Source: Macrostomum lignano
Lineage: Eukaryota
NCBI GenBank assembly: GCA_002269645.1
Contig: NIVC01002014.1
Location: 124,001 to 188,000 of the forward strand
Direction: 5' to 3'
Length of the DNA: 64,000 nucleotides
Below, one piece after another: positions 1,645 through 59,795 of the stretch (position 1 is the first letter of the stretch; the number at the start of each line of letters is the position of its first letter). The notes under the pieces were generated by a model. It was not told the DNA's origin. It saw only the letters and a program-made list of their open reading frames with translations, and searched no databases. The translations under genes and the position numbers were made by a program.

Positions 1645-2155
1645 ACATGCATATAGGCTGACTAAAACACACATTGCACTGAACCAATGGTCTTTTGGCC
1701 ATAGACAGTCTCAGTGGGCTGCCGAGCGCTTCGACATGCATAGGCTGACTAAAACACACATTGCACTGAACCAATGGTCTTTTGGCCATAGACAGTCTCA
1801 GTGGGCTGCCGAGCGCTTCGACATGCATAGGCTGACTAAAACACACATTGCACTGAACCAATGGTCTTTTGGCCATAGACAGTCTCAGTGGGCTGCCGTG
1901 CGCTTCAACATGCATAGGCTGACTAAAACACACATTGCACTGAACCAATGGTCTTTTGGCCATAGACAGTCTCAGTGGGCTGCCGTGCGCTTCGACATGC
2001 ATAGGCTGACTAAAACACACATTGCACTGAACCAATGGTCTTTTGGCCATAGACAGTCTCAGTGGGCTGCCGTGCGCTTCGACATGCATAGGCTGACTAA
2101 AACACACATTGCACTGAACCAATGGTCTTTTGGCCATAGACAGTCTCAGTGGGCT
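1645..2155. repeat. 87-bp tandem repeat, about 6 near-identical copies
   Basis: GAACCAATGG at 1681, 1768, 1855, 1942, 2029 and 2116. Confidence 0.95.
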
Positions 2156-10771: not shown

Positions 10772-11558
10772 GTAATATACCTTTTAACAGTGTTGTTGGG
10801 CATAAGTGAAATTTATTTAGTCCAAGTGTTCCTACCACTGAGTGAAGTGAGTTTGATTTAGTCTAGCTGTTGATTTTGGCCATAGACGATTGATGAAAAG
10901 TGAAATATATTTGGTCGCTCTTGCTTAGCGCTGAGCTTACCGTGACTTAAAGTTAGTCGTAGTGAAATTTATTTAGTCCGCTTAGAGTTCTTGTTTGGCT
11001 ATAGAATTTGCTGAATCATAGAATTCTTTCCATGGAGGCTCCAGCAGCACAGAGACGAGTCGCTGTTTCGCAGCAAGACAGGCGAAGGCTGGTCAATGCC
11101 TTTGTTCTCAACGAGGACTGGCTCAATCTGGCAAAACAGCTCAACATACCGCGCCAGTCTGCAAGGAATGTTATCGTTAAGTTTGAGCGAACTGGTCGTG
11201 TCGAGGCGGAAAAGCGAGGAGGCAACAAGCCGAAAGCTCTGAGTGATGAGATGATCGAGGCTCTCGTGGGATTTGTGGCGGACACGCCAGCTGCGACACT
11301 ACAAGACATGCGGAGACATCTTATGTGTTTTTGCGCCTTTTTGAAAGTTTACGATCTCGTTGACCATATTCATTTCACTTTGACTAAATAAAAGTCACGA
11401 TCTCGTTGCGCGCGCTAAAAACGACTATATTGAATTCACCGTCTATGGCTGCAAGCTAATTGAAGCGACTAAATCAAACTCACTTCGCTCAGTGGTAGGA
11501 GCACTTGGACTAGATAAATTTCACTTATGCCCAACAACACTGTTAAAAGGTATATTAC
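10772..11558 (+). mobile_element. Internally deleted IS630/Tc1-mariner-type element
   Basis: 92-bp TIRs (10772-10863 / 11467-11558, 3 mismatches) and an inner direct repeat AGTGAAATTTATTTAGTC. The TSD is ambiguous (TA inside a palindrome). Confidence 0.8.
11032..11391 (+). pseudogene. N-terminal helix-turn-helix region of an IS630/Tc1-like transposase; DDE domain absent
   Basis: LAKQLNIPRQSARNVIVKFERTG...RGGNKPKALSDE...TPAATLQDMR is the bipartite HTH pattern of this family. The frame turns non-homologous and stops. Confidence 0.7.
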
Positions 11559-25351: not shown

Positions 25352-26122
25352 GGCAATCCTACACTTCCGTTCGGTAAATTATTTTGACATTTGAATTTTG
25401 AACAGGCGTGTTAAATAACAATGTAACCAAACAAAACTGAAACAGTGGAACATGGTAGCAGTCTGTTAGAGTGCATAGTCACTTAGAGTGTGTCTGTAGG
25501 TCATTAAGGTGTCTACAATGGATAGTAATGTCCAATCCAGTACAGGATAGCCCCAAATGGACATTGGGGATACAGACGACGCCAGAGAAATTCCTCAATG
25601 TGTGCGTCGAAGAGAGCGTCGCTTGTGCTATGCATGTTGCGGATCTTGCGCTTCGCGTGGGCCCATGTGCCCTCCACGGTGTTGGTGTGGACTGTTGGGT
25701 CCGCTGGATCTACGAAGTGCAGCCGATGGTTCACCGAGACGTGGTTGGGTAGACAAGACAGGAAGATATGAGAAGCTCAATAAAACAAACTGTCAAAAAG
25801 CTAGACGAGTAAGGAGATGGATCAGCTTCTCTGTTTAAACTGACTGGGGCTAAGAAAAAGAACGTTTCTTATACTGTTCGTGTTGCCCATTCCTCTTGTA
25901 CAGGGACCAGTGTGCTTCCGACCGGAAAAAATATCTATGGCTCAGTCAGAAGCCAAATAGTCTATGGTTTAGACTATAGTTTAGTTTAGAATAGTTTGCA
26001 CCCCTTTAAACTCTGTTCGCTCAAACTTTTGGCCATAGACACATTGCCAATCGACGTAATTTGACTCGGTGGTACGAATTCAAATGTGAAAATAATTTAC
26101 CAAACAAAAGTGTAGGATTGCC
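25352..26122 (-). mobile_element. Merlin (IS1595/ISXO2-like) non-autonomous derivative
   Basis: 46-bp TIRs starting GGCAATCCTACAC (4 mismatches), perfect 8-bp TSD CAAAAGCC (25344-25351 / 26123-26130) and a C-terminal transposase fragment 25513-25734 (VNH..HFVDP...HTNTVEGTW..AK...IEEFLWRR). Confidence 0.9.
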
Positions 26123-26769: not shown

Positions 26770-27367
26770 TGGGGTGCATGTCAAAATGGCCACACACAAA
26801 ATGTCCTCACGATGGGATAGCCACACCGTCAAAATGGCCACACATCAAAATGGCCATATATCAAAATGGCCACATATAACAAATTTTTACAAGTTGTGTA
26901 TGCGTGAGTTAGTTTAGTTGAGTGAGTTAGTTGAATCAATTTAATGTTAGTTTATTTCATCATACAATGTGCAAATATGTTTCTAAAGTTATTTAATTAA
27001 GTCTTTATGCTAATGTGTCAAGTTATTCGAGTTATTAGATACTTGCTTATAGTCCAATGTTTATAGACTTTGTAAGAAATTGCAGATTGGATTCGAAATT
27101 CGACTTGATAATAAATGCATAGGATAATTTCAAATAAGTATGCAAACAAGTTTATATGTCTTTAAACAAATATGTGCCACAAAGTAAAATTAAAATTAGT
27201 AAAGTCAATAAAATTAGGTTGATGTCCTAATTTCAAATGTCTGGCCATGATGGTGCAGCCATTCAAATTTGTTATATGTGGCCATTTTGACGTGTAGCCA
27301 TTTTGACAATGTGGCCATTCTGTTGTGAGGCCATTTGGTGTGTGGCCGTTTTGATGTGGATTCAGCC
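26770..27367. mobile_element. Decayed MITE-like element with TCAAAATGGCCAC subterminal arrays in inverted orientation
   Basis: 4-5 motif copies at 26780-26880 and inverted copies at 27240-27360. GCCTAT flanks both ends (possible TSD). Confidence 0.5.
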
Positions 27368-28770
27368 TATGGTCATGCAGATACTGATAAAACAAAAATT
27401 TTGGATGGTTGTTGGACTGATAGATTTTTGCACTATTATGGTTATAAGTATATACTATTATGGTTATAAGTAGACATTTAAAGATAGGCCTATTAAAGAC
27501 TCAAATGCAGAAAATTGAAATGGCTTAATTGTTGCCCAAATTTTAATGCCTCATTGTTGTTTTATTGTAAGTGTTATTAAAAAGCATATAAAAGTTTAAA
27601 GTATTTAAAAAAATATACAAGTGTTTTATAATAAAGGCTTCAACACAAAACAGGAAAAAATGTGACATTTTATAATTACAAGTATTAGGGCCTACAAATA
27701 ATGTGCAAAAAATATTGAAAAATAGTTTAAAATTGCTTGGAGAAGCCAATAGTAAACTATTAATGCTTTAATATCATAAAAGTTTTGAGATAAATTATTT
27801 ATTTGTCATTGGATGACAACAAAAGTTGGGGTCTTTGTGCTGGGTACAAAAACTCAGTAGGCCTAGCAGTAGCAAGGCTAGAAGCGATAGCCACTTCCAG
27901 CGAGCTGCAGACCTCTTAGCAGCATGCTTTAGGATGCATGCCATTTCTTTTTTGATGGCCTATTCTGATGGCTTCAATTTATCATATGGATAGATAAGCA
28001 CAATTGTGTCTGTGGTAGGAAAAGTTGTATAATTTTTGTAGCACTCATACAGAAAATTAATTTTAATTACTCTCAGTAGTAGAAAAATAATTTTTATTAG
28101 CAGTCTTTTTTAAACTGTTTTTAACCAAGGATAAGATTTGCATTGTTTTTGCCTACTCTGCATTTTATCTTCTATAATATAGCATATACTCATATTTCAT
28201 ATAAGCTTACTTATATTCAATGGTGGGAAGTTATTTCATCTTCCAATGTTAATTCAAACAATAGTTTTCAGCAAACTCTCAAGTCGTTTTTTCTTCTCAG
28301 CCACTATTTGGTATAGCATATAGACTGTTGGGTCCAAATCTATTGTAAGGATCCAGCAACACTTATAGAACAATAGCATTGTACTATTCACCTTAGTACT
28401 TTGCCCTAACATGTATTGGGCTCAGATAATAGTGGTTCATATTGTTTAAAGCTGTCTAGTTCTCACTAGTAAAACTTGAATATTTGTTGTCTAGCTTAAC
28501 CTCCTCTTCCAACCTTTCAACAATTTGGCTGTCCTCAATAAAGAAAACTATGTATTGTGTCATTGTCTTAGAAATAACAAATTTATCTTAATAGCAAAAC
28601 ACAAATCACTGGGTATAATGTCTTTCTATGCCAATTTAAAGTTATATTTCTTCCTTATTTGGCTCTCTATTCCTCATAACCAACCCTGTCATTTGGCAAA
28701 TTCCAAGGTCCATTGAAACCCAAAACTGAATTCCAATTGGCTCACCACTCGTAAAGTAAGTTAATGGTAG

Positions 28771-30722
28771 ATTAAGTCTATGGTTTCAGACTCGGATAAT
28801 GATCACAGTCACGAGTGGCGAAGCCACGAGTGACTGCTGATCATTATTTAATTCTGAAACCATAGACATAATCGCATTATCATATAGACTAGCGTTTTCG
28901 GTTGATCATTATGTAACGCCATTAAGCCACGCCATTAAGTAACGCTGCAGTGTCTTTGTGCCATAGATATTGGCTCGGCAGTGAGCAGGGACAAGGGGGC
29001 GCAGCTCCCTTGCGGGGGTGTGGGGGCAGAGCCCCCACTAATTGGACCATAGACAATTTTTTAGAATACAGTTCTCTAAATGAAAAGCTCGACCATGAAG
29101 TCTGTTAGGAAGTTAAGAACTAGAAGCAAGAAGCGAGAGAAATCGAATTAAAAATGCCTCTTATCAACTGGAAAAACCTACCGGTCGACAGTTTAGATGG
29201 CGTCTCGTCTACTGAACTAGATTTTCTGAGTGAACTGAGCGCCGTGAACCACAGTTCCGATGAAATTCTTGGAGATTTTATCGACTACCTGACTAAAATC
29301 GAGACGGCTGATGAGGCCGCTGCGGTTTCTAGTGTCGAGCTTCCAGAACTATCTGATTTACCCAGTGCGATGGATGTTGCCGAACTGGAATCACTGCCAA
29401 GCACTACACGAGAACACATGTTTCTGTATGGCAAAATGTTCGTGGAGTTTTTGAAGAAACATGGTGCTGTGGATGTAAGCGTGATCAGTGACAGTCGCTT
29501 GGCCGAATTTTTAAGGTTCTTTTACTTCTGTCTAAAAAAATCTGACGGCAGTTGCTATTCGCCAGCTACGTTGGTCTGCATTCGTGCTGGAGTGCAGAGG
29601 TACTCGACTCTCGTGCTGAAGCGTCGAACAAATATTATTTCCAGTGACGAGTTCGCCACTGCCAACCGGATGCTGCGAGTAAAGGTGCGGCATTTTCATG
29701 CTGATGGAGGAACTGTCAATCAGCACGAGCCAATAGAAGAAGGTGATTTACAGAAAATGCGTGCTTATTTTGACCGTTCTACAGCAGAACGGTTGCAAGA
29801 TGAAGTACTATTTACGCTGCTGTATGTCCTGGGCGAGAGAGGTCAAGAACACCTGTCAAGTCTAAAGCAAGTTGGCACGCTCCAAGAAGAAGTCGACGCT
29901 GATGGGAATCCATATCTTGCGTTGCCGCCGTTAAAGACAAAAAACCAGACTAGCGATCCAACAAAATGCAAGGGAAATCAGCGCAAACAGAGTCGGATCT
30001 ACGGCGCTCAGCGGGAGTTGATCCTGCATTATCAGAGTTTGTTACCGCAGAATTCGTCCTCGTTCTTTCCGCGCCCTCTGACTAACAATTCGGGAGGACA
30101 AATTCGATTCTCTGCTACGCAAGTGCGCGGTGTCAATTGGTTGGCTGCATTCATGAAGCACGTTAGTAGTGTGTGCAACCTCTCCAAGCAGTACACGAAT
30201 CACTGCATACGCGTCACGCGTATTGCGGATCTTTTCGACAAAGGAATGCCTATGGGGGAGATAATGGCGGTAACGGGACAACGATCGGAGTCCACTGTTC
30301 GACGTTATCTCGCACGCAAGCGTGACAGAACCCTCAGGAAGGTTGCTACCGCTGTTAGTGACAATTTGGCCGCACCAACCGATGCGACTACGAGTGCAAC
30401 CACTAGTGCAACAGTCATGCAGCAAGCTCAAGTTGACCTGCGAAGTGTGCAACAGCCGATGTTTGCCAACTGCCTCTTCGATGGGTGCACGTTCAAATTC
30501 TAACAAAGAATATATAGCTCGTACTTATAAGTCTTAACTGTCGAAAATCAAATACTTTGGTATTCGTTTGCTTTGCTATATCCTCGATCTGTTTCCTGTT
30601 AAAGTTCTTGTTGCTTAAATTAATAAAAACAGTGAATTTCTCGCTCATAATCTATGGCAATTTATCGTGACTTAACAGCTTCATTAAAAAATGCATTAAA
30701 AAACGATAGTCTATATGATAAT
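28771..30722 (+). mobile_element. Crypton-type tyrosine-recombinase DNA transposon
   Basis: Single YR ORF, terminal sequences complementary to an internal site, 92-bp left hairpin (28776-28867) and AATAAA at ~30621. No RT or DDE gene. Confidence 0.85.
29154..30503 (+). CDS. Tyrosine recombinase (Crypton/DUF3504, KCTD1/ZMYM-related), 449 aa, intact frame
   Basis: SAM-like region (LAEFLRFFYFCLKKSDGSCYSPATLVCIRAGVQRY) and catalytic motifs GERGQE, KTKN, YTNHCIR and TGQRSESTVRRY. Confidence 0.9.
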   Translation: MPLINWKNLPVDSLDGVSSTELDFLSELSAVNHSSDEILGDFIDYLTKIETADEAAAVSSVELPELSDLPSAMDVAELESLPSTTREHMFLYGKMFVEFLKKHGAVDVSVISDSRLAEFLRFFYFCLKKSDGSCYSPATLVCIRAGVQRYSTLVLKRRTNIISSDEFATANRMLRVKVRHFHADGGTVNQHEPIEEGDLQKMRAYFDRSTAERLQDEVLFTLLYVLGERGQEHLSSLKQVGTLQEEVDADGNPYLALPPLKTKNQTSDPTKCKGNQRKQSRIYGAQRELILHYQSLLPQNSSSFFPRPLTNNSGGQIRFSATQVRGVNWLAAFMKHVSSVCNLSKQYTNHCIRVTRIADLFDKGMPMGEIMAVTGQRSESTVRRYLARKRDRTLRKVATAVSDNLAAPTDATTSATTSATVMQQAQVDLRSVQQPMFANCLFDGCTFKF

Positions 30723-32462
30723 TTAGTTTGAGACAAAGCTTCTACTATTAGTTAGTATTTGACTCTTTGACATAGAGACTAAAACCTTGAGAATGCCAGA
30801 CTGCTTTTCTTTGTTCTGCTTTGCCCACTGCTTCATTGAATGCCTTGTAGCATATCAAAACCAAGATTTATAGCTGTAGCTTGTAGAAATTATAAAACCT
30901 ATTCTATACATTGGTTTGTGAACCCTAGATCAAATGAAGAGGCTCAAAAAAGCTCTTTGTTATTGGGGGTATGAGTGACTAAACTAGAGGTAGCTAATTT
31001 AAAAAATATAAAAATATTGGAAGGAGAGGCTTGAGAGGCTTTCACTTGCTTCTTTACAGCAGCATCTCTTGCAACCAACCCATTACCCACTTGTTTGCTA
31101 TCAGTATCAAAGAAGCCTTTGAAGTGGTTCCTTTTCTATCCAACTCAGTCTCCCATAAAGTAAACAACCTTATGACTTTTAATCTAGATTGTAGTTTAGT
31201 TCACTGTTTCCACCAATCAAACAGAATAGTAACAATGTATTTGGTGCAGCTAGAAATTCAAATCCCTTGGGGAGTAGAAGGAGTGGGCCTGTACAGTATC
31301 AAAAATATAGTATGCTCATATTACTTTGCATTTTCTGGGGTCTCCTGTTGCCCCTTTGCTGCGCCAACACCTGAATAGAGAGGCTAACAAAAATTCCCAA
31401 ATTATATTACAGATAGATCAAACTCAATCAGTGTGCCCTCAAGAGCTTTTTTTTCTAAGATCAAAGTTAGTCCATTTATTGTCATTTTTTGAGTTTTTGT
31501 CAATAATTTCAGAAGTAATGACTGTAAAAATAATTAAATTTAAGAGAACTAGTGTTGAAAACTAATCAATTGAATAATTAAACCAACTTTTTAGTAAGTT
31601 CAAAGTAAGTCCATTTTTTCTACAAGGCAACCACCTAACCGAACCTAGCTTCTCTCTGTTCTTTCTTTCCAGAGACTTCTAAATATAAGAGCTTGACTGG
31701 CAAGGGTTTTGGGCCCCTTGCAAGATGAGACCTGCTTTTCTAGCCAATAGCTTTAGGGCTAATAGCAGTTTTGCATTGAAGCTGAACAAAAAACAGAGCA
31801 TTAACTGGGAAGCAAATAGTTTTTTGATATTGCAAACAATTTAAAGCTTTTAAATAAAAATTTTTTGTCAAAGTTTCCTTTCACTAACTTCATAAACAAA
31901 TATAGTAATTAATTCAATGTATTAAAATGCATTCATAATTGTATTGAAGTAAACACAATAGAAATGGATGTTGTTACATTTGCTCAAGTTGGTATATTAT
32001 AGGTATCTAGTCAATTGAATATTGAACTATTATATGAGTAGAATACAAAAATACACAAATGAGTGCTAGATTAAGTGCTAATTAGCTTTACAGATGAAAA
32101 ATTTTAGTCTTGATGGGCTAGTAGAAATGGAAAGCAAAAATTGCTTTAATAAATAATTGGCAAATGGGATGCAAATTTTGCAGGAAAATGGAGCGCTTAC
32201 TAAAGACTATCAATTAGAATTATTTAGCAAGTTTTAGCACTTATTCACTTATATTAAGATATTTAAATTTGTTGTTAAGCTTAGAACTTTTGTGCAGACT
32301 ATTTATCTTTTTGAAAGAACTAGATTCAATGGGTCACTTGCTCTGCATTATATTCTTTGATTTACTACATTGAGGTGTCACAAACACAAAAGAATATATC
32401 CACACAGCACAAATAAATATAGTAAAATAAAAAAACAATTACAAAACATAAAGCCATCTATC

Positions 32463-42931: not shown

Positions 42932-59795
<16,864 letters not shown>

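What the first reader, a model, noticed from the sequence alone, without database searches (positions are those of the whole stretch)
28771..30722. RT-less tyrosine-recombinase element carries an internal site complementary to its two ends joined together
Seen: left end A (28771-28790, ATTAAGTCTATGGTTTCAGA) pairs 19/20 with 28853-28872. Right end B (30700-30722) pairs 22/23 with 28876-28898. The two internal arms are adjacent, separated only by CGC. The reverse complement of the internal site (GTCTATATGATAAT-GCG-ATTATGTCTATGG) therefore equals the predicted circle junction (GTCTATATGATAAT-nnn-ATTAAGTCTATGG). Established: DIRS1 retrotransposons use an internal complementary region that pairs with both termini to circularise single-stranded cDNA, but they encode RT; Cryptons encode only a YR. 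Inference: either a single-stranded intermediate is splinted into a circle, or the excised circle holds two complete YR sites in inverted orientation. The second case is an Flp/FRT (2-micron)-like geometry that could invert the ~100-bp hairpin or drive amplification. I do not recall this mechanism being described for Cryptons, but cannot check the literature here.
Basis: partly seen in the sequence, partly recalled or inferred. Interest (0 to 1): 0.85.

Follow-up and report, generated by a model that had tools for sequence, protein, structure and literature searches.

The report
Crypton transposon with conserved terminal hairpin
This is an intact flatworm "Crypton" jumping gene, and its odd end structure (a hairpin followed by an inverted copy of the two joined ends) recurs in at least 15 distantly related Crypton families, giving a structural signature to a transposon class described as having none and hinting at a single-stranded DNA step.

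Summary
A pairs with A' 19/20, B with B' 22/23, and the internal arms lie 3 bp apart. The window is Macrostomum lignano. The element (about 28762/28766-30722) has one intact 449-aa tyrosine recombinase ORF of the CryptonA group and no RT.

The layout is not private to this copy. In hairpin-first orientation it reads: short AAT-ending direct repeat, 70-200-nt imperfect hairpin, inverted copy of the other terminus, cargo, that terminus, direct repeat. I found it in at least 15 divergent CryptonA families from public contigs. Several have ends fixed by multiple copies with different flanks, and some have real head-to-tail junctions.

Three further features are conserved:
- The ORF lies in either orientation relative to the hairpin, depending on the clade.
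- The outer junction side usually has 2 more nt next to the AAT than the internal copy.
- The hairpin apex is a GCGNAGC/GCGNNAGC-type "mini-hairpin DNA" motif, always on the strand where the hairpin is 5'-terminal.

This rules out an independent MITE, a promoter role and an mRNA structure. It argues against routine Flp-like inversion. It favours a folded-DNA, probably single-stranded, recombination or priming structure. I found no description of it in the searchable Crypton literature. The mechanism is inferred, not shown.

The parts
28762..28765 (+). Probable left copy of the terminal direct repeat (TAAT), the crossover site
   Evidence: It matches TAAT at 30719-30722. Relatives with ends fixed by several different flanks carry TAAT (fam1) or ACAAT (fam2) at both ends, directly before the hairpin. 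For this single copy the assignment is inferred.
28766..28770 (+). GGTAG, the junction-side spacer between direct repeat and hairpin arm; it is 2 nt longer than its internal counterpart GCG
   Evidence: The alignment of predicted junction to internal site shows a 2-nt gap at exactly this point. The same gap appears in 9 of 10 upstream-hairpin families and as a 2-3-nt bulge in folds.
28770..28873 (+).
   Evidence: Arms 28770-28805 and 28838-28873 are 86% complementary. DNA fold -38.4 kcal/mol, z = -8.6. A homologous hairpin occupies the same position in at least 11 other families.
28818..28824 (+). GCGAAGC apex of the hairpin (GAA triloop closed by C-G): a 'mini-hairpin DNA' motif
   Evidence: The motif class GCGNAGC/GCGNNAGC is defined in PMC13037366. 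A C-GNA-G or C-GNNA-G loop sits at the apex in all 18 families checked, always on the strand where the hairpin is 5'-terminal; 13 of the 18 carry the full motif.
28873..28875 (+). CGC, the internal counterpart (reverse complement GCG) of the junction-side GGTAG
28876..28898 (+). B': inverted copy of the right terminus, starting with ATTA, the complement of the direct repeat; weak similarity continues to about 28931
   Evidence: 22/23 complementary to 30700-30722. Its score exceeds all 60 control windows. The 75% extension is.
28995..29038 (+). GC-rich block with the perfect 8-bp stem GTGGGGGC-AGA-GCCCCCAC (29020-29038), between B' and the ORF
   Evidence: Read directly. Function not tested.
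29154..30503 (+). Tyrosine recombinase gene, 449 aa, intact, CryptonA type
   Evidence: ORF. R229, K263, H350, R353 and Y385 are invariant across 13 relatives at 28-54% identity. Weak Pfam Phage_integrase and QRICH1 hits; relatives hit DUF3504, QRICH1 and Phage_integrase. Best BLASTP matches are published CryptonA sequences.
30622..30627 (+). AATAAA, a possible polyadenylation signal downstream of the ORF
   Evidence: Read directly. Not tested.
30700..30722 (+). B: right terminus, ending in the direct repeat TAAT (30719-30722)
   Evidence: Right ends of relatives all end in AAT: TAACAAT, GAATAAT or GAGAAT.

Best explanation
The region is an intact, probably recently active CryptonA-type DNA transposon of Macrostomum lignano. 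It is about 1.96 kb, with one tyrosine-recombinase gene and no reverse transcriptase.

Its end structure is a conserved hallmark of a broad clade of CryptonA elements. On one defined strand it reads 5'-[..AAT direct repeat]-2 extra nt-[arm A-mini-hairpin loop-arm A']-[ATT]-[B']-cargo-[B]-[..AAT]-3'.

Shown:
- The layout, its conservation with unrelated arm sequences, and the ends in multi-copy families.
- Head-to-tail junctions that carry a single direct repeat.
- The 2-nt asymmetry between outer and internal sites.
- The strand-specific GNA/GTTA apex.
- Independence from ORF orientation.

Inferred:
- The recombinase crosses over at the AAT repeat to excise and insert the element through a circular form, which is the standard Crypton model.
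- In that form the junction (B-AAT-NN-A) and its inverted internal copy become the two arms of one 150-200-nt imperfect palindrome.
- This palindrome works as a folded-DNA structure on the strand that carries the GNA loop, most likely in single-stranded DNA. The fold would present the crossover site in a stem with a small bulge, as in integron attC or CTX-phage attP, and/or act as a complementary-strand priming signal.
- The internal copy is a pairing or binding partner, not a second crossover site.
For: Identity:
- The window lies on M. lignano contig NIVC01002014.1.
- The ORF is intact with invariant R-K-H-R-Y.
- The closest published sequences are CryptonA: CryA1_OL 8e-16 and the ATF7IP-Crypton 2e-17, against 1e-3 or worse for CryptonI/S/F and DIRS. 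Relatives hit DUF3504, QRICH1 and Phage_integrase.
- A second copy, 99.3% identical at protein level, sits in a different locus (P0007).

Conservation of the layout:
- fam1: L005 direct repeat TAAT, hairpin 218-330, segment 329-343 complementary 15/15 to the right end 2088-2102. At least 4 different left flanks and 5 right flanks.
- fam2: L012 direct repeat ACAAT, hairpin 95-182, segment 182-202 complementary to the right end 1892-1912.
- L021, L024, L026, L028, L036 and L037 beat all 60 control windows. L027 is 16/16.
- Mirrored families L039 (17/17), L057 (15/15), L076 (12/12) and L096. Boundaries were confirmed by multiple copies for the L076 and L057 families; in the L096 family the hairpin lies at the right end of the shared block but the left-end pairing sits about 66 nt inside it.

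Junctions: L017 joins the right end to the left end with one ACAAT. L030 holds a tandem with a 2094-bp unit.

Folding:
- Predicted junction palindromes fold at -57 to -61 kcal/mol, with a 2-3-nt bulge directly after the direct repeat, in three families.
- A 2-nt excess on the outer side is seen in 9 of 10 families plus L039.
- The apex loop is C-GNA-G or C-GNNA-G in 18 of 18 families, always on the hairpin-first strand. That strand is ORF-sense in 12 families and antisense in 6.
- These are the mini-hairpin DNA motifs found at single-strand priming sites of phages G4, St-1 and alpha3 and of ssiA (PMC13037366).
Against: - No experiment and no read-level data were available. Circles, single-stranded forms and cleavage positions are all unobserved.
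- L017 and L030 could come from tandem arrays rather than free circles.
- Only one DNA copy of the M. lignano element could be examined, so its exact ends rest on analogy.
- The 2-nt rule has exceptions: L024 shows a net 1, and L076 is reversed.
- About 30 more distant families showed no hairpin with my ungapped scan. Many of those contigs are short or cut.
- Eukaryotic tyrosine recombinases studied so far (Flp, Cre-like) act on double-stranded sites. A cruciform in a supercoiled double-stranded circle, or simple protein binding to duplicated sites, would explain most features except the strand bias of the loop.
- The structure prediction was too poor to add anything (pLDDT 44.8).
Confidence: 0.55

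Rival explanations
1. Double-stranded-only model. The element moves as a double-stranded circle. The internal inverted copy is an accessory recombinase-binding site, or the palindrome extrudes as a cruciform, and it helps assemble the synaptic complex or sets directionality. No single-stranded stage is involved.
For: This is the standard Crypton model (PMC3212892). The arms next to the crossover repeat are duplicated, as expected for protein-binding sites. The different spacer length would make the internal copy a non-cleavable partner. Small supercoiled circles with 3-4-nt centres extrude cruciforms easily (own knowledge).
Against: - Pairing runs through the whole 70-200 nt down to a 3-4-nt loop, far beyond a binding site.
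- The loop is a strand-specific mini-hairpin motif in 18 of 18 families. Double-stranded DNA has no reason to conserve this on one strand.
Confidence: 0.25
2. DIRS-like splint. A linear single-stranded copy, whether cDNA made by a reverse transcriptase in trans or displaced DNA, anneals both ends to the internal site and is ligated into a circle.
For: The topology equals the DIRS ITR/ICR definition. In the mirrored clade the order is left end, ORF, ICR, short segment, right end, exactly as in DIRS1.
Against: - There is no RT in the element, and the recombinase is not of the DIRS clade.
- The ends do not abut on the splint; there is a 2-nt excess or 3-nt gap.
- The folding strand is mRNA-sense in one clade and antisense in the other, so it cannot be a first-strand cDNA in both.
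- The close relatives L002 and L019 carry introns in the gene.
Confidence: 0.07
3. Flp/FRT-like pair. The circle carries two functional inverted sites, and recombination between them inverts one arc, for example to drive 2-micron-style amplification.
For: There are two inverted near-identical sites in the circular form. Both ORF orientations relative to the hairpin exist among clades, so at least one inversion happened in evolution.
Against: - The sites differ in spacer length by 2 nt in most families. Tyrosine recombinases need matching spacers (own knowledge of Flp and Cre).
- Every multi-copy family shows a single arrangement and no flipped hairpin: fam1 7 contigs, fam2 7, L076 family 5, L096 family 5, L057 family 4.
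- The short arc is itself a palindrome of 60-100 bp, so inverting it changes almost nothing.
Confidence: 0.06
4. Coincidence of two elements: a 104-bp palindromic MITE inserted next to a Crypton that has simple 23-bp terminal inverted repeats. Alternatively, chance similarity.
For: Nested and adjacent transposons are common in this window, for example 10772-11558 and 25352-26122.
Against: - The same hairpin-plus-inverted-terminus layout, at the same position and with unrelated sequences, occurs in at least 15 families.
- There is no other copy of the hairpin in the window.
- Shuffles expect 0.00 matches.
Confidence: 0.01

Closest known systems
CryptonA transposons (Goodwin et al. 2003; Kojima and Jurka 2011, PMC3212892)
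   Same: - A single tyrosine-recombinase ORF of about 450 aa with R-H-R-Y and no RT.
- Size of 1.8-2.3 kb, like CryptonA-1_OL (2073 bp), CryptonA-1_LG (1970 bp) and CryptonA-2_SP (2263 bp).
- Short terminal direct repeats.
- Protein sequence closest to published CryptonA and to CryptonA-derived genes (DUF3504, KCTD1, the ATF7IP insert).
   Different: Published descriptions say animal Cryptons have no terminal repeats, direct or inverted, and list them as 'n.d.'. Here there is a conserved terminal hairpin, an inverted copy of the other end, and a conserved AAT crossover repeat. Whether the Repbase CryptonA consensus sequences also carry this could not be checked.
DIRS1-type tyrosine-recombinase retrotransposons (ITRs plus internal complementary region)
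   Same: An internal site complementary to the beginning of one terminus and the end of the other, so a circle carries the junction and its inverted copy. In the mirrored clade even the order of parts is the same.
   Different: No gag, RT, RNase H or methyltransferase, and the recombinase belongs to another clade. The inverted repeat is a tight hairpin at one end rather than 300-bp ITRs at both ends. The strand logic does not fit a cDNA.
Folded single-strand recombination sites of bacterial tyrosine recombinases: integron attC (IntI) and CTX-phage attP (XerCD)
   Same: An imperfect palindrome whose folded form contains the crossover point in a stem with unpaired bases beside it. Use of one strand is implied. 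Inserting a folded circle by single-strand exchange would give exactly the integrated layout seen here.
   Different: The enzyme family and the hosts are unrelated, and nothing here is shown biochemically. The comparison rests on my own knowledge of those systems plus the structure predictions.
Flp/FRT of the yeast 2-micron plasmid
   Same: A eukaryotic tyrosine recombinase and two inverted sites on a circle.
   Different: Here the sites are not identical (2-nt spacer difference). They are separated by only a hairpin loop, no isomers are seen, and the element is integrated in chromosomes with varied flanks.
Mini-hairpin DNA at single-strand initiation signals (phage G4/St-1/alpha3 complementary-strand origins, RSF1010 ssiA; PMC13037366)
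   Same: The same apex motifs (GCGAAGC, GCGTAGC, GCGTTAGC, CCGAAGG), sitting on top of a longer hairpin on one strand.
   Different: Those are priming sites of bacterial single-stranded replicons. A priming role in a eukaryotic transposon is speculation.

Membership tests
Crypton (CryptonA group) | Encodes a tyrosine recombinase with the catalytic R-H-R-Y residues | tested here: met
   R229, H350, R353 and Y385 (plus K263) are invariant in a 13-sequence alignment at 28-54% identity. Pfam Phage_integrase is weak on this protein (E 0.005, below cut-off) but above cut-off on relatives.
Crypton (CryptonA group) | The recombinase groups with CryptonA / DUF3504 rather than with CryptonF, CryptonS, CryptonI or DIRS | tested here: met
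   BLASTP against the sequences of Kojima and Jurka's Additional file 4: CryptonA and its derived genes score 2e-17 to 3e-4, the others 1e-3 or worse. Relatives hit DUF3504 and QRICH1. No tree was built.
Crypton (CryptonA group) | No reverse transcriptase or other transposition gene | tested here: met
   The only long ORF in 28762-30722 is the recombinase. Related elements are 1.8-2.1 kb with one ORF.
Crypton (CryptonA group) | Short (4-6 bp) direct repeats at both termini, the same in all copies | tested here: inconclusive
   Met in relatives: TAAT in fam1 and ACAAT in fam2, with several different flanks. In the window, TAAT is present at 28762-28765 and 30719-30722, but with a single copy the assignment is by analogy.
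Crypton (CryptonA group) | Described as lacking terminal inverted repeats and other structural hallmarks | tested here: not met
   There is a 23-nt inverted repeat and a 104-nt terminal hairpin, conserved in relatives. This is a departure from the published description, not from the enzyme-based definition.
Crypton (CryptonA group) | Mobility, meaning multiple copies at different loci, and a circular intermediate | tested here: inconclusive
   A second M. lignano copy, 99.3% identical at protein level, lies in another gene context. Relatives have many flanks and head-to-tail junctions. Circles themselves cannot be tested with these tools.
DIRS1-like retrotransposons | An RT/RNase H ORF | tested here: not met
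   None in the element.
DIRS1-like retrotransposons | An internal complementary region that matches the start of one terminus and the end of the other | tested here: met
   The definition is from PMC8969392.
DIRS1-like retrotransposons | A recombinase of the DIRS clade | tested here: not met
   The DIRS-1_SP hit is only 1e-3 over 99 aa, and DIRS1 gives no hit, against 1e-13 to 1e-17 for CryptonA.
Flp/FRT-type inversion system | Two inverted sites with identical spacers | tested here: not met
   The outer site has 2 more nt than the inner one in 9 of 10 families.
Flp/FRT-type inversion system | Both inversion isomers present in the population | tested here: not met
   All contigs of five multi-copy families share one arrangement. 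Sample sizes are small, at 4-7 contigs each.
Folded single-strand att sites (attC / CTX attP type) | An imperfect palindrome with unpaired bases next to the crossover point, and strand-specific features | tested here: met
   Folds show a 2-3-nt bulge after the AAT. The strand-specific GNA/GTTA apex is in 18 of 18 families.
Folded single-strand att sites (attC / CTX attP type) | The recombinase acts on the folded single strand, with resolution by replication | not testable with these tools
   Needs biochemistry or strand-specific sequencing.
Independent MITE beside the element | The hairpin occurs on its own elsewhere, with its own target-site duplication | tested here: not met
   No other copy in the window. 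In relatives the hairpin is always part of the shared block.

The most novel reading that the evidence does not exclude
CryptonA elements transpose through a folded single strand of DNA. One defined strand, the one carrying the GNA mini-hairpin, is excised or copied as a single-stranded circle. Its junction pairs with the internal inverted copy to form a bulged hairpin that the tyrosine recombinase recombines with the target, as integron cassettes and CTX phage do in bacteria. The same hairpin may also prime complementary-strand synthesis. This would be the first eukaryotic tyrosine-recombinase transposon of this kind. It would also suggest that the DIRS internal complementary region was inherited from a Crypton-like ancestor as a recombination structure, not invented for reverse transcription.
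Probability: 0.3. Interest if true: 0.92.

Novelty: new variant of a known kind. Interest (0 to 1): 0.8.

Why it matters
Cryptons are the least understood class of eukaryotic DNA transposons. Their ends are hard to find, and curation guides say they have no structural signature beyond a few repeated bases.

- A conserved, easily searchable layout would let annotators delimit CryptonA elements and find their non-autonomous derivatives. The layout is an AAT repeat, a GNA-capped hairpin, and an inverted copy of the far end.
- It gives concrete substrates for the first biochemical tests of a Crypton recombinase.
- It links Cryptons structurally to DIRS retrotransposons. This bears on the proposal that DIRS arose from a Crypton plus a Gypsy-type RT.
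- It raises the testable possibility that a eukaryotic tyrosine recombinase works on folded single-stranded DNA.
- The domesticated relatives of this enzyme (ZMYM2-4, QRICH1, KCTD1) are human disease genes with unknown DNA-recognition properties. Knowing what the ancestral enzyme recognises could inform that question.

Tried and rejected
- Two word-indexed protein searches returned only six close relatives. The full HMMER scan was needed to reach the wider family.
- P0004 and P0005 (UniRef M. lignano proteins) have no contig on record. No second M. lignano DNA copy or empty site could be fetched. Copy number and exact ends in this genome therefore remain untested.
- The PDB sequence search gave nothing relevant.
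- AlphaFold on a 5-sequence alignment gave pLDDT 44.8. I ran no fold search because the matches would be meaningless.
- L001, L004 and L019 are single short contigs cut near or inside the palindromes, so they are only partly informative. L019 has a hairpin at 8-123, and its contig end pairs with 101-116. L001 lacks the left end.
- I asked whether GTCTATGG (in A, A', 29047 and, as GTCTAT, in B) is the recombinase-binding word. It is shared with the close relatives L001 and L019. However, [AG]GCCATAGAC is also enriched elsewhere in the window inside unrelated Tc1-like elements, so I draw no conclusion.
- A promoter or 5'-UTR role for the hairpin is rejected, because in another clade the hairpin lies downstream of the ORF.
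- An RNA-structure role is rejected for the same reason, and because GNA/GTTA loops are DNA-specific stabilisers.
- Covariation statistics on the hairpin alignment (A4) were not pursued. Duplicated protein-binding sites would co-vary in the same way, so the test would not discriminate.
- My ungapped hairpin scan found nothing convincing in about 30 more distant families. This is not evidence of absence.
Full report
**1. The observation**

I read window 28400-31100 directly.
- A (28771-28790, ATTAAGTCTATGGTTTCAGA) has one other match in the 64-kb window, on the minus strand at 28853-28872 with one mismatch. Shuffles expect 0.00 matches.
- The repeat finder reports arms 28770-28805 and 28838-28873 (36 nt, 86%), and arms 28876-28898 and 30700-30722 (23 nt, 96%).
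- The two internal arms are separated by CGC (28873-28875). The reverse complement of the internal site is AAAACGCTAGTCTATATGATAAT-GCG-ATTATGTCTATGGTTTCAGA. The joined ends are AAAACGATAGTCTATATGATAAT|ATTAAGTCTATGGTTTCAGA.
- Positions 28770-28873 form one 104-nt near-palindrome. As DNA it folds at -38.4 kcal/mol, z = -8.6.
- The B'/B similarity continues at 75% for about 56-60 nt.

**2. What the element is**

- The window lies on Macrostomum lignano contig NIVC01002014.1, assembly GCA_002269645.1, in a 12.6-kb AT-rich intergenic stretch.
- The only substantial ORF between the ends is 29154-30503 (449 aa).
- Pfam gives only weak Phage_integrase (residues 333-388) and QRICH1 hits.
- A full HMMER scan with a 5-sequence profile found 5028 relatives, 221 of them at E below 1e-30. 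Sampled relatives hit DUF3504, QRICH1 and Phage_integrase, several above the curated cut-offs.
- In a 13-sequence alignment at 28-54% identity, R229, K263, H350, R353 and Y385 are invariant.
- I compared the protein by BLASTP with the sequences of Additional file 4 of Kojima and Jurka 2011. It matches CryptonA elements and CryptonA-derived genes best: the ATF7IP insert at 2e-17, CryA1_OL at 8e-16, CryA2_SP at 1e-13. CryptonI, CryptonS, CryptonF and DIRS score 1e-3 or worse.
- A UniRef M. lignano gene model (P0007, 'Neprilysin', 1558 aa) contains a 99.3% identical copy of the ORF. The rest of that model is absent from the window, so a second copy exists at another locus.

The element is therefore an intact, RT-less CryptonA transposon that was probably active recently.

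**3. The layout is conserved**

*Two families with many contigs*

Two distant relatives (33% and 28% protein identity) are each carried on seven public metagenome or Logan contigs.
- fam1 (L005-L011). The shared block is about 1890 bp, with at least four different left flanks and five right flanks. It starts TAAT-ATAACAATATTG and ends CTGAATAAT. A hairpin with 55-nt arms occupies L005 218-330, directly after the TAAT. The next 15 nt (329-343) are perfectly complementary to the right end, 2088-2102.
- fam2 (L012-L018). The shared block is 1824 bp, bounded by ACAAT on both sides, with a hairpin at 95-182. Positions 182-202 are complementary to the right end, 1892-1912.
- L017 contains a real head-to-tail junction with a single ACAAT, and L018 is exactly one unit. 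In L013-L015 the right end is followed by the hairpin of a different, related element. L030 holds a tandem with a 2094-bp unit.

*Systematic test*

A scan of JGI metagenome contigs with a 13-sequence profile gave 80 more loci in about 52 DNA-level families. For each locus I asked two things: is there a strong hairpin upstream of the ORF, and does the segment just after it pair with a segment downstream of the ORF better than 60 control windows do?
- Positive: the window, L005, L012/L032, L021, L024, L026, L028, L036 and L037. L027 is 16/16 by the repeat finder.
- Borderline: L025 and L030.
- The arm sequences differ between families, but the pairing is kept.
- All right ends finish in AAT (TAACAAT, GAATAAT, GAGAAT, GATAAT).

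*A mirrored clade*

In more distant families the strong hairpin lies downstream of the ORF.
- There, the segment just before the hairpin pairs with the left end of the element: L039 17/17, L057 15/15, L076 12/12, and L096 over 22 nt.
- For the L076 and L057 families, several copies with different flanks confirm that the hairpin is the outer end of the shared block. They also confirm that the paired segment lies at the other end. In the L096 family the hairpin is at the right end of the shared block. Its left-end pairing, however, sits about 66 nt inside that block, so this boundary is less clear.
- This is the same layout with the gene on the other strand.
- The hairpin is therefore not a promoter, a UTR element or a terminator of the recombinase gene.

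**4. Two further conserved details**

*A 2-nt asymmetry.* I aligned the outer junction side with the internal copy.
- The outer side has two more nucleotides between the AAT and arm A in 9 of 10 upstream-hairpin families, and in L039.
- Examples: window GGTAG against GCG; L021 TAGGA against CAG; L012 and L026 GT against none; L005, L025, L028, L036 and L037 AT or AA against none; L039 AGGAC against GAT.
- Exceptions: L024 shows a net 1, and L076 is reversed.
- When the predicted or real junction is folded together with the internal copy, this appears as a 2-3-nt bulge directly after the direct repeat. The stems are 150-190 nt at -57 to -61 kcal/mol.
- This pattern also supports placing the window's left direct repeat at TAAT 28762-28765.

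*A conserved apex.* The alignment of ten hairpins shows a conserved apex.
- In all 18 families examined, the loop is C-GNA-G or C-GNNA-G on the strand where the hairpin is 5'-terminal.
- In the hairpin-upstream clade the loops are GAA, GTA, GTTA and GCA. In the mirrored clade they are GGA, GCA, GAA and GTTA on the strand antisense to the ORF.
- 13 of the 18 carry the full GCGNAGC or GCGNNAGC motif. The window has GCGAAGC at 28818-28824.
- These are the 'mini-hairpin DNA' sequences of Kimoto and Hirao (PMC13037366). That review describes them as exceptionally stable in single-stranded DNA. It also reports them at complementary-strand priming sites of phages G4, St-1 and alpha3 and of ssiA.
- The motif is common in random sequence; the window holds about 100 copies. 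The evidence is its position at the dyad and its strand, not its mere presence.

**5. Mechanism**

*Shown:* the layout, its conservation, the ends in multi-copy families, single-repeat junctions, the asymmetry, the strand-specific loop, and independence from gene orientation.

*Inferred:*
- The recombinase crosses over at the AAT repeat, and the element passes through a circular form, as proposed for Cryptons (PMC3212892).
- In that form the junction and its inverted copy are the arms of one long imperfect palindrome.
- Pairing extends through the whole hairpin to a 3-4-nt loop, and that loop is a DNA-specific stabiliser on one strand only. I therefore think the structure is selected to fold, most likely in single-stranded DNA.
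- A folded circle recombined on its 5' arm at AAT with a target would give exactly the integrated order seen: flank-AAT-NN-A-loop-A'-ATT-B'-cargo-B-AAT-flank.
- This is how integron attC and CTX-phage attP sites work (my own knowledge of those systems).
- A priming role for the hairpin on a single-stranded circle is an alternative or additional function.

I put 0.55 on this combined statement, and about 0.3 on the specific single-strand recombination mechanism.

**6. Rivals**

- A purely double-stranded model, with an accessory site or a cruciform, explains everything except the strand bias of the loop (0.25).
- The DIRS-type cDNA splint fails for three reasons: no RT, imperfect abutment of the ends, and a folding strand that is sense in one clade and antisense in the other (0.07).
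- Flp-like inversion is disfavoured by the unequal spacers and by the single arrangement seen in every multi-copy family. The two clade-level orientations do show that an inversion happened at least once (0.06).
- An independent MITE or chance similarity is excluded (0.01).

**7. Comparison and novelty**

- By its enzyme the element is a CryptonA member.
[quoted passage not shown]'.
- A 2022 curation guide says the only distinguishing feature of Cryptons is a short direct repeat.
- Searches combining Crypton with 'internal complementary region', 'palindrom*', 'hairpin' and 'DUF3504' found no description of this layout.
- Repbase reports and subscription reviews, for example Poulter and Butler 2015, could not be read, so prior mention cannot be excluded.
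- The topology equals the DIRS ITR/ICR definition. This is of interest given the proposal that DIRS arose from a Crypton plus a Gypsy RT.

I class this as a new variant of a known kind.

**8. Limits**

- No second M. lignano DNA copy, no empty site and no read data could be obtained, so the window's exact left end is inferred.
- The metagenome contigs are short, of unknown host, and sometimes chimeric at palindromes.
- The hairpin scan was ungapped, so absence in distant families is not established.
- The structure prediction was uninformative.

Noticed in passing
window 1701-2136, 6405, 10882, 11441, 26035, 33214: The 10-mer [AG]GCCATAGAC occurs at six independent places outside the element, against about 0.24 expected (my own estimate from sequence length and 10-mer frequency). 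One of these is an 87-bp tandem array at 1701-2136. Several copies lie just inside the inverted repeats of unrelated transposon remnants. The same core, GTCTATGG, sits in the Crypton's arms. I do not know whether this is a host motif, a Tc1-like subterminal motif or coincidence.
   Followed up: partly
window 10772-11558: A Tc1/mariner-like remnant with 92-nt terminal inverted repeats (97% identical). It carries an internal ORF fragment encoding an HTH-type transposase N-terminus (MEAPAAQRRVAVSQQDRRRLVNAF...).
   Followed up: partly
window 25352-26122: A MITE-like unit of about 770 bp with 46-nt inverted repeats (91%). Near its right end it contains two facing GTCTATGG copies (25960 on +, 26035 on -). 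One of them, AGTCTATGGTTTAGACT, closely resembles the Crypton's arm A.
   Followed up: partly
window 26781-27354: An inverted repeat with 86-nt arms (83%), built from reiterated AAAATGGCCACA units. This is another foldback or MITE-like structure 1.4 kb upstream of the Crypton.
   Followed up: no
window 43258-43543 and 45544-45806: Two near-identical blocks of 23-25-bp tandem repeats (TAGTCTATCACAGGTGCCACTAC...) about 2.3 kb apart. This suggests a duplicated satellite-bearing segment.
   Followed up: no
window 28995-29038: A GC-rich island inside the otherwise AT-rich 5' part of the element. It includes the perfect stem GTGGGGGC-AGA-GCCCCCAC, about 115 bp upstream of the start codon. It could be a promoter element or a second structure.
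   Followed up: no
L013-L015 (for example L013 about 2070-2180), L022 1932-2037, L030 2161-2254: The right ends of several related elements are followed directly by the hairpin of another copy or of a different related family, giving head-to-tail arrays. This suggests preferential insertion into resident junctions, or rolling-circle-like amplification.
   Followed up: partly
L002 about 1422-1503; L019 about 1312-1424: Two close relatives of the window's recombinase gene (51-53% identity) carry a spliceosomal-type intron, at different positions. The window copy and the multi-copy marine families have none.
   Followed up: no
P0007 (UniRef A0A1I8IM85) and P0004 (A0A1I8H8Y0): Older M. lignano gene models fuse Crypton recombinase ORFs to host genes, and UniProt names them 'Neprilysin' and 'PIPK domain-containing protein'. 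These names are annotation artefacts caused by transposon insertions.
   Followed up: partly
PMC3212892 Additional file 1: Some oomycete CryptonF elements are listed with terminal direct repeats GATAAT or ATTATC. These are the same words that end this flatworm CryptonA (..ATGATAAT and ATTATC..). This may point to a crossover sequence conserved across Crypton groups.
   Followed up: no
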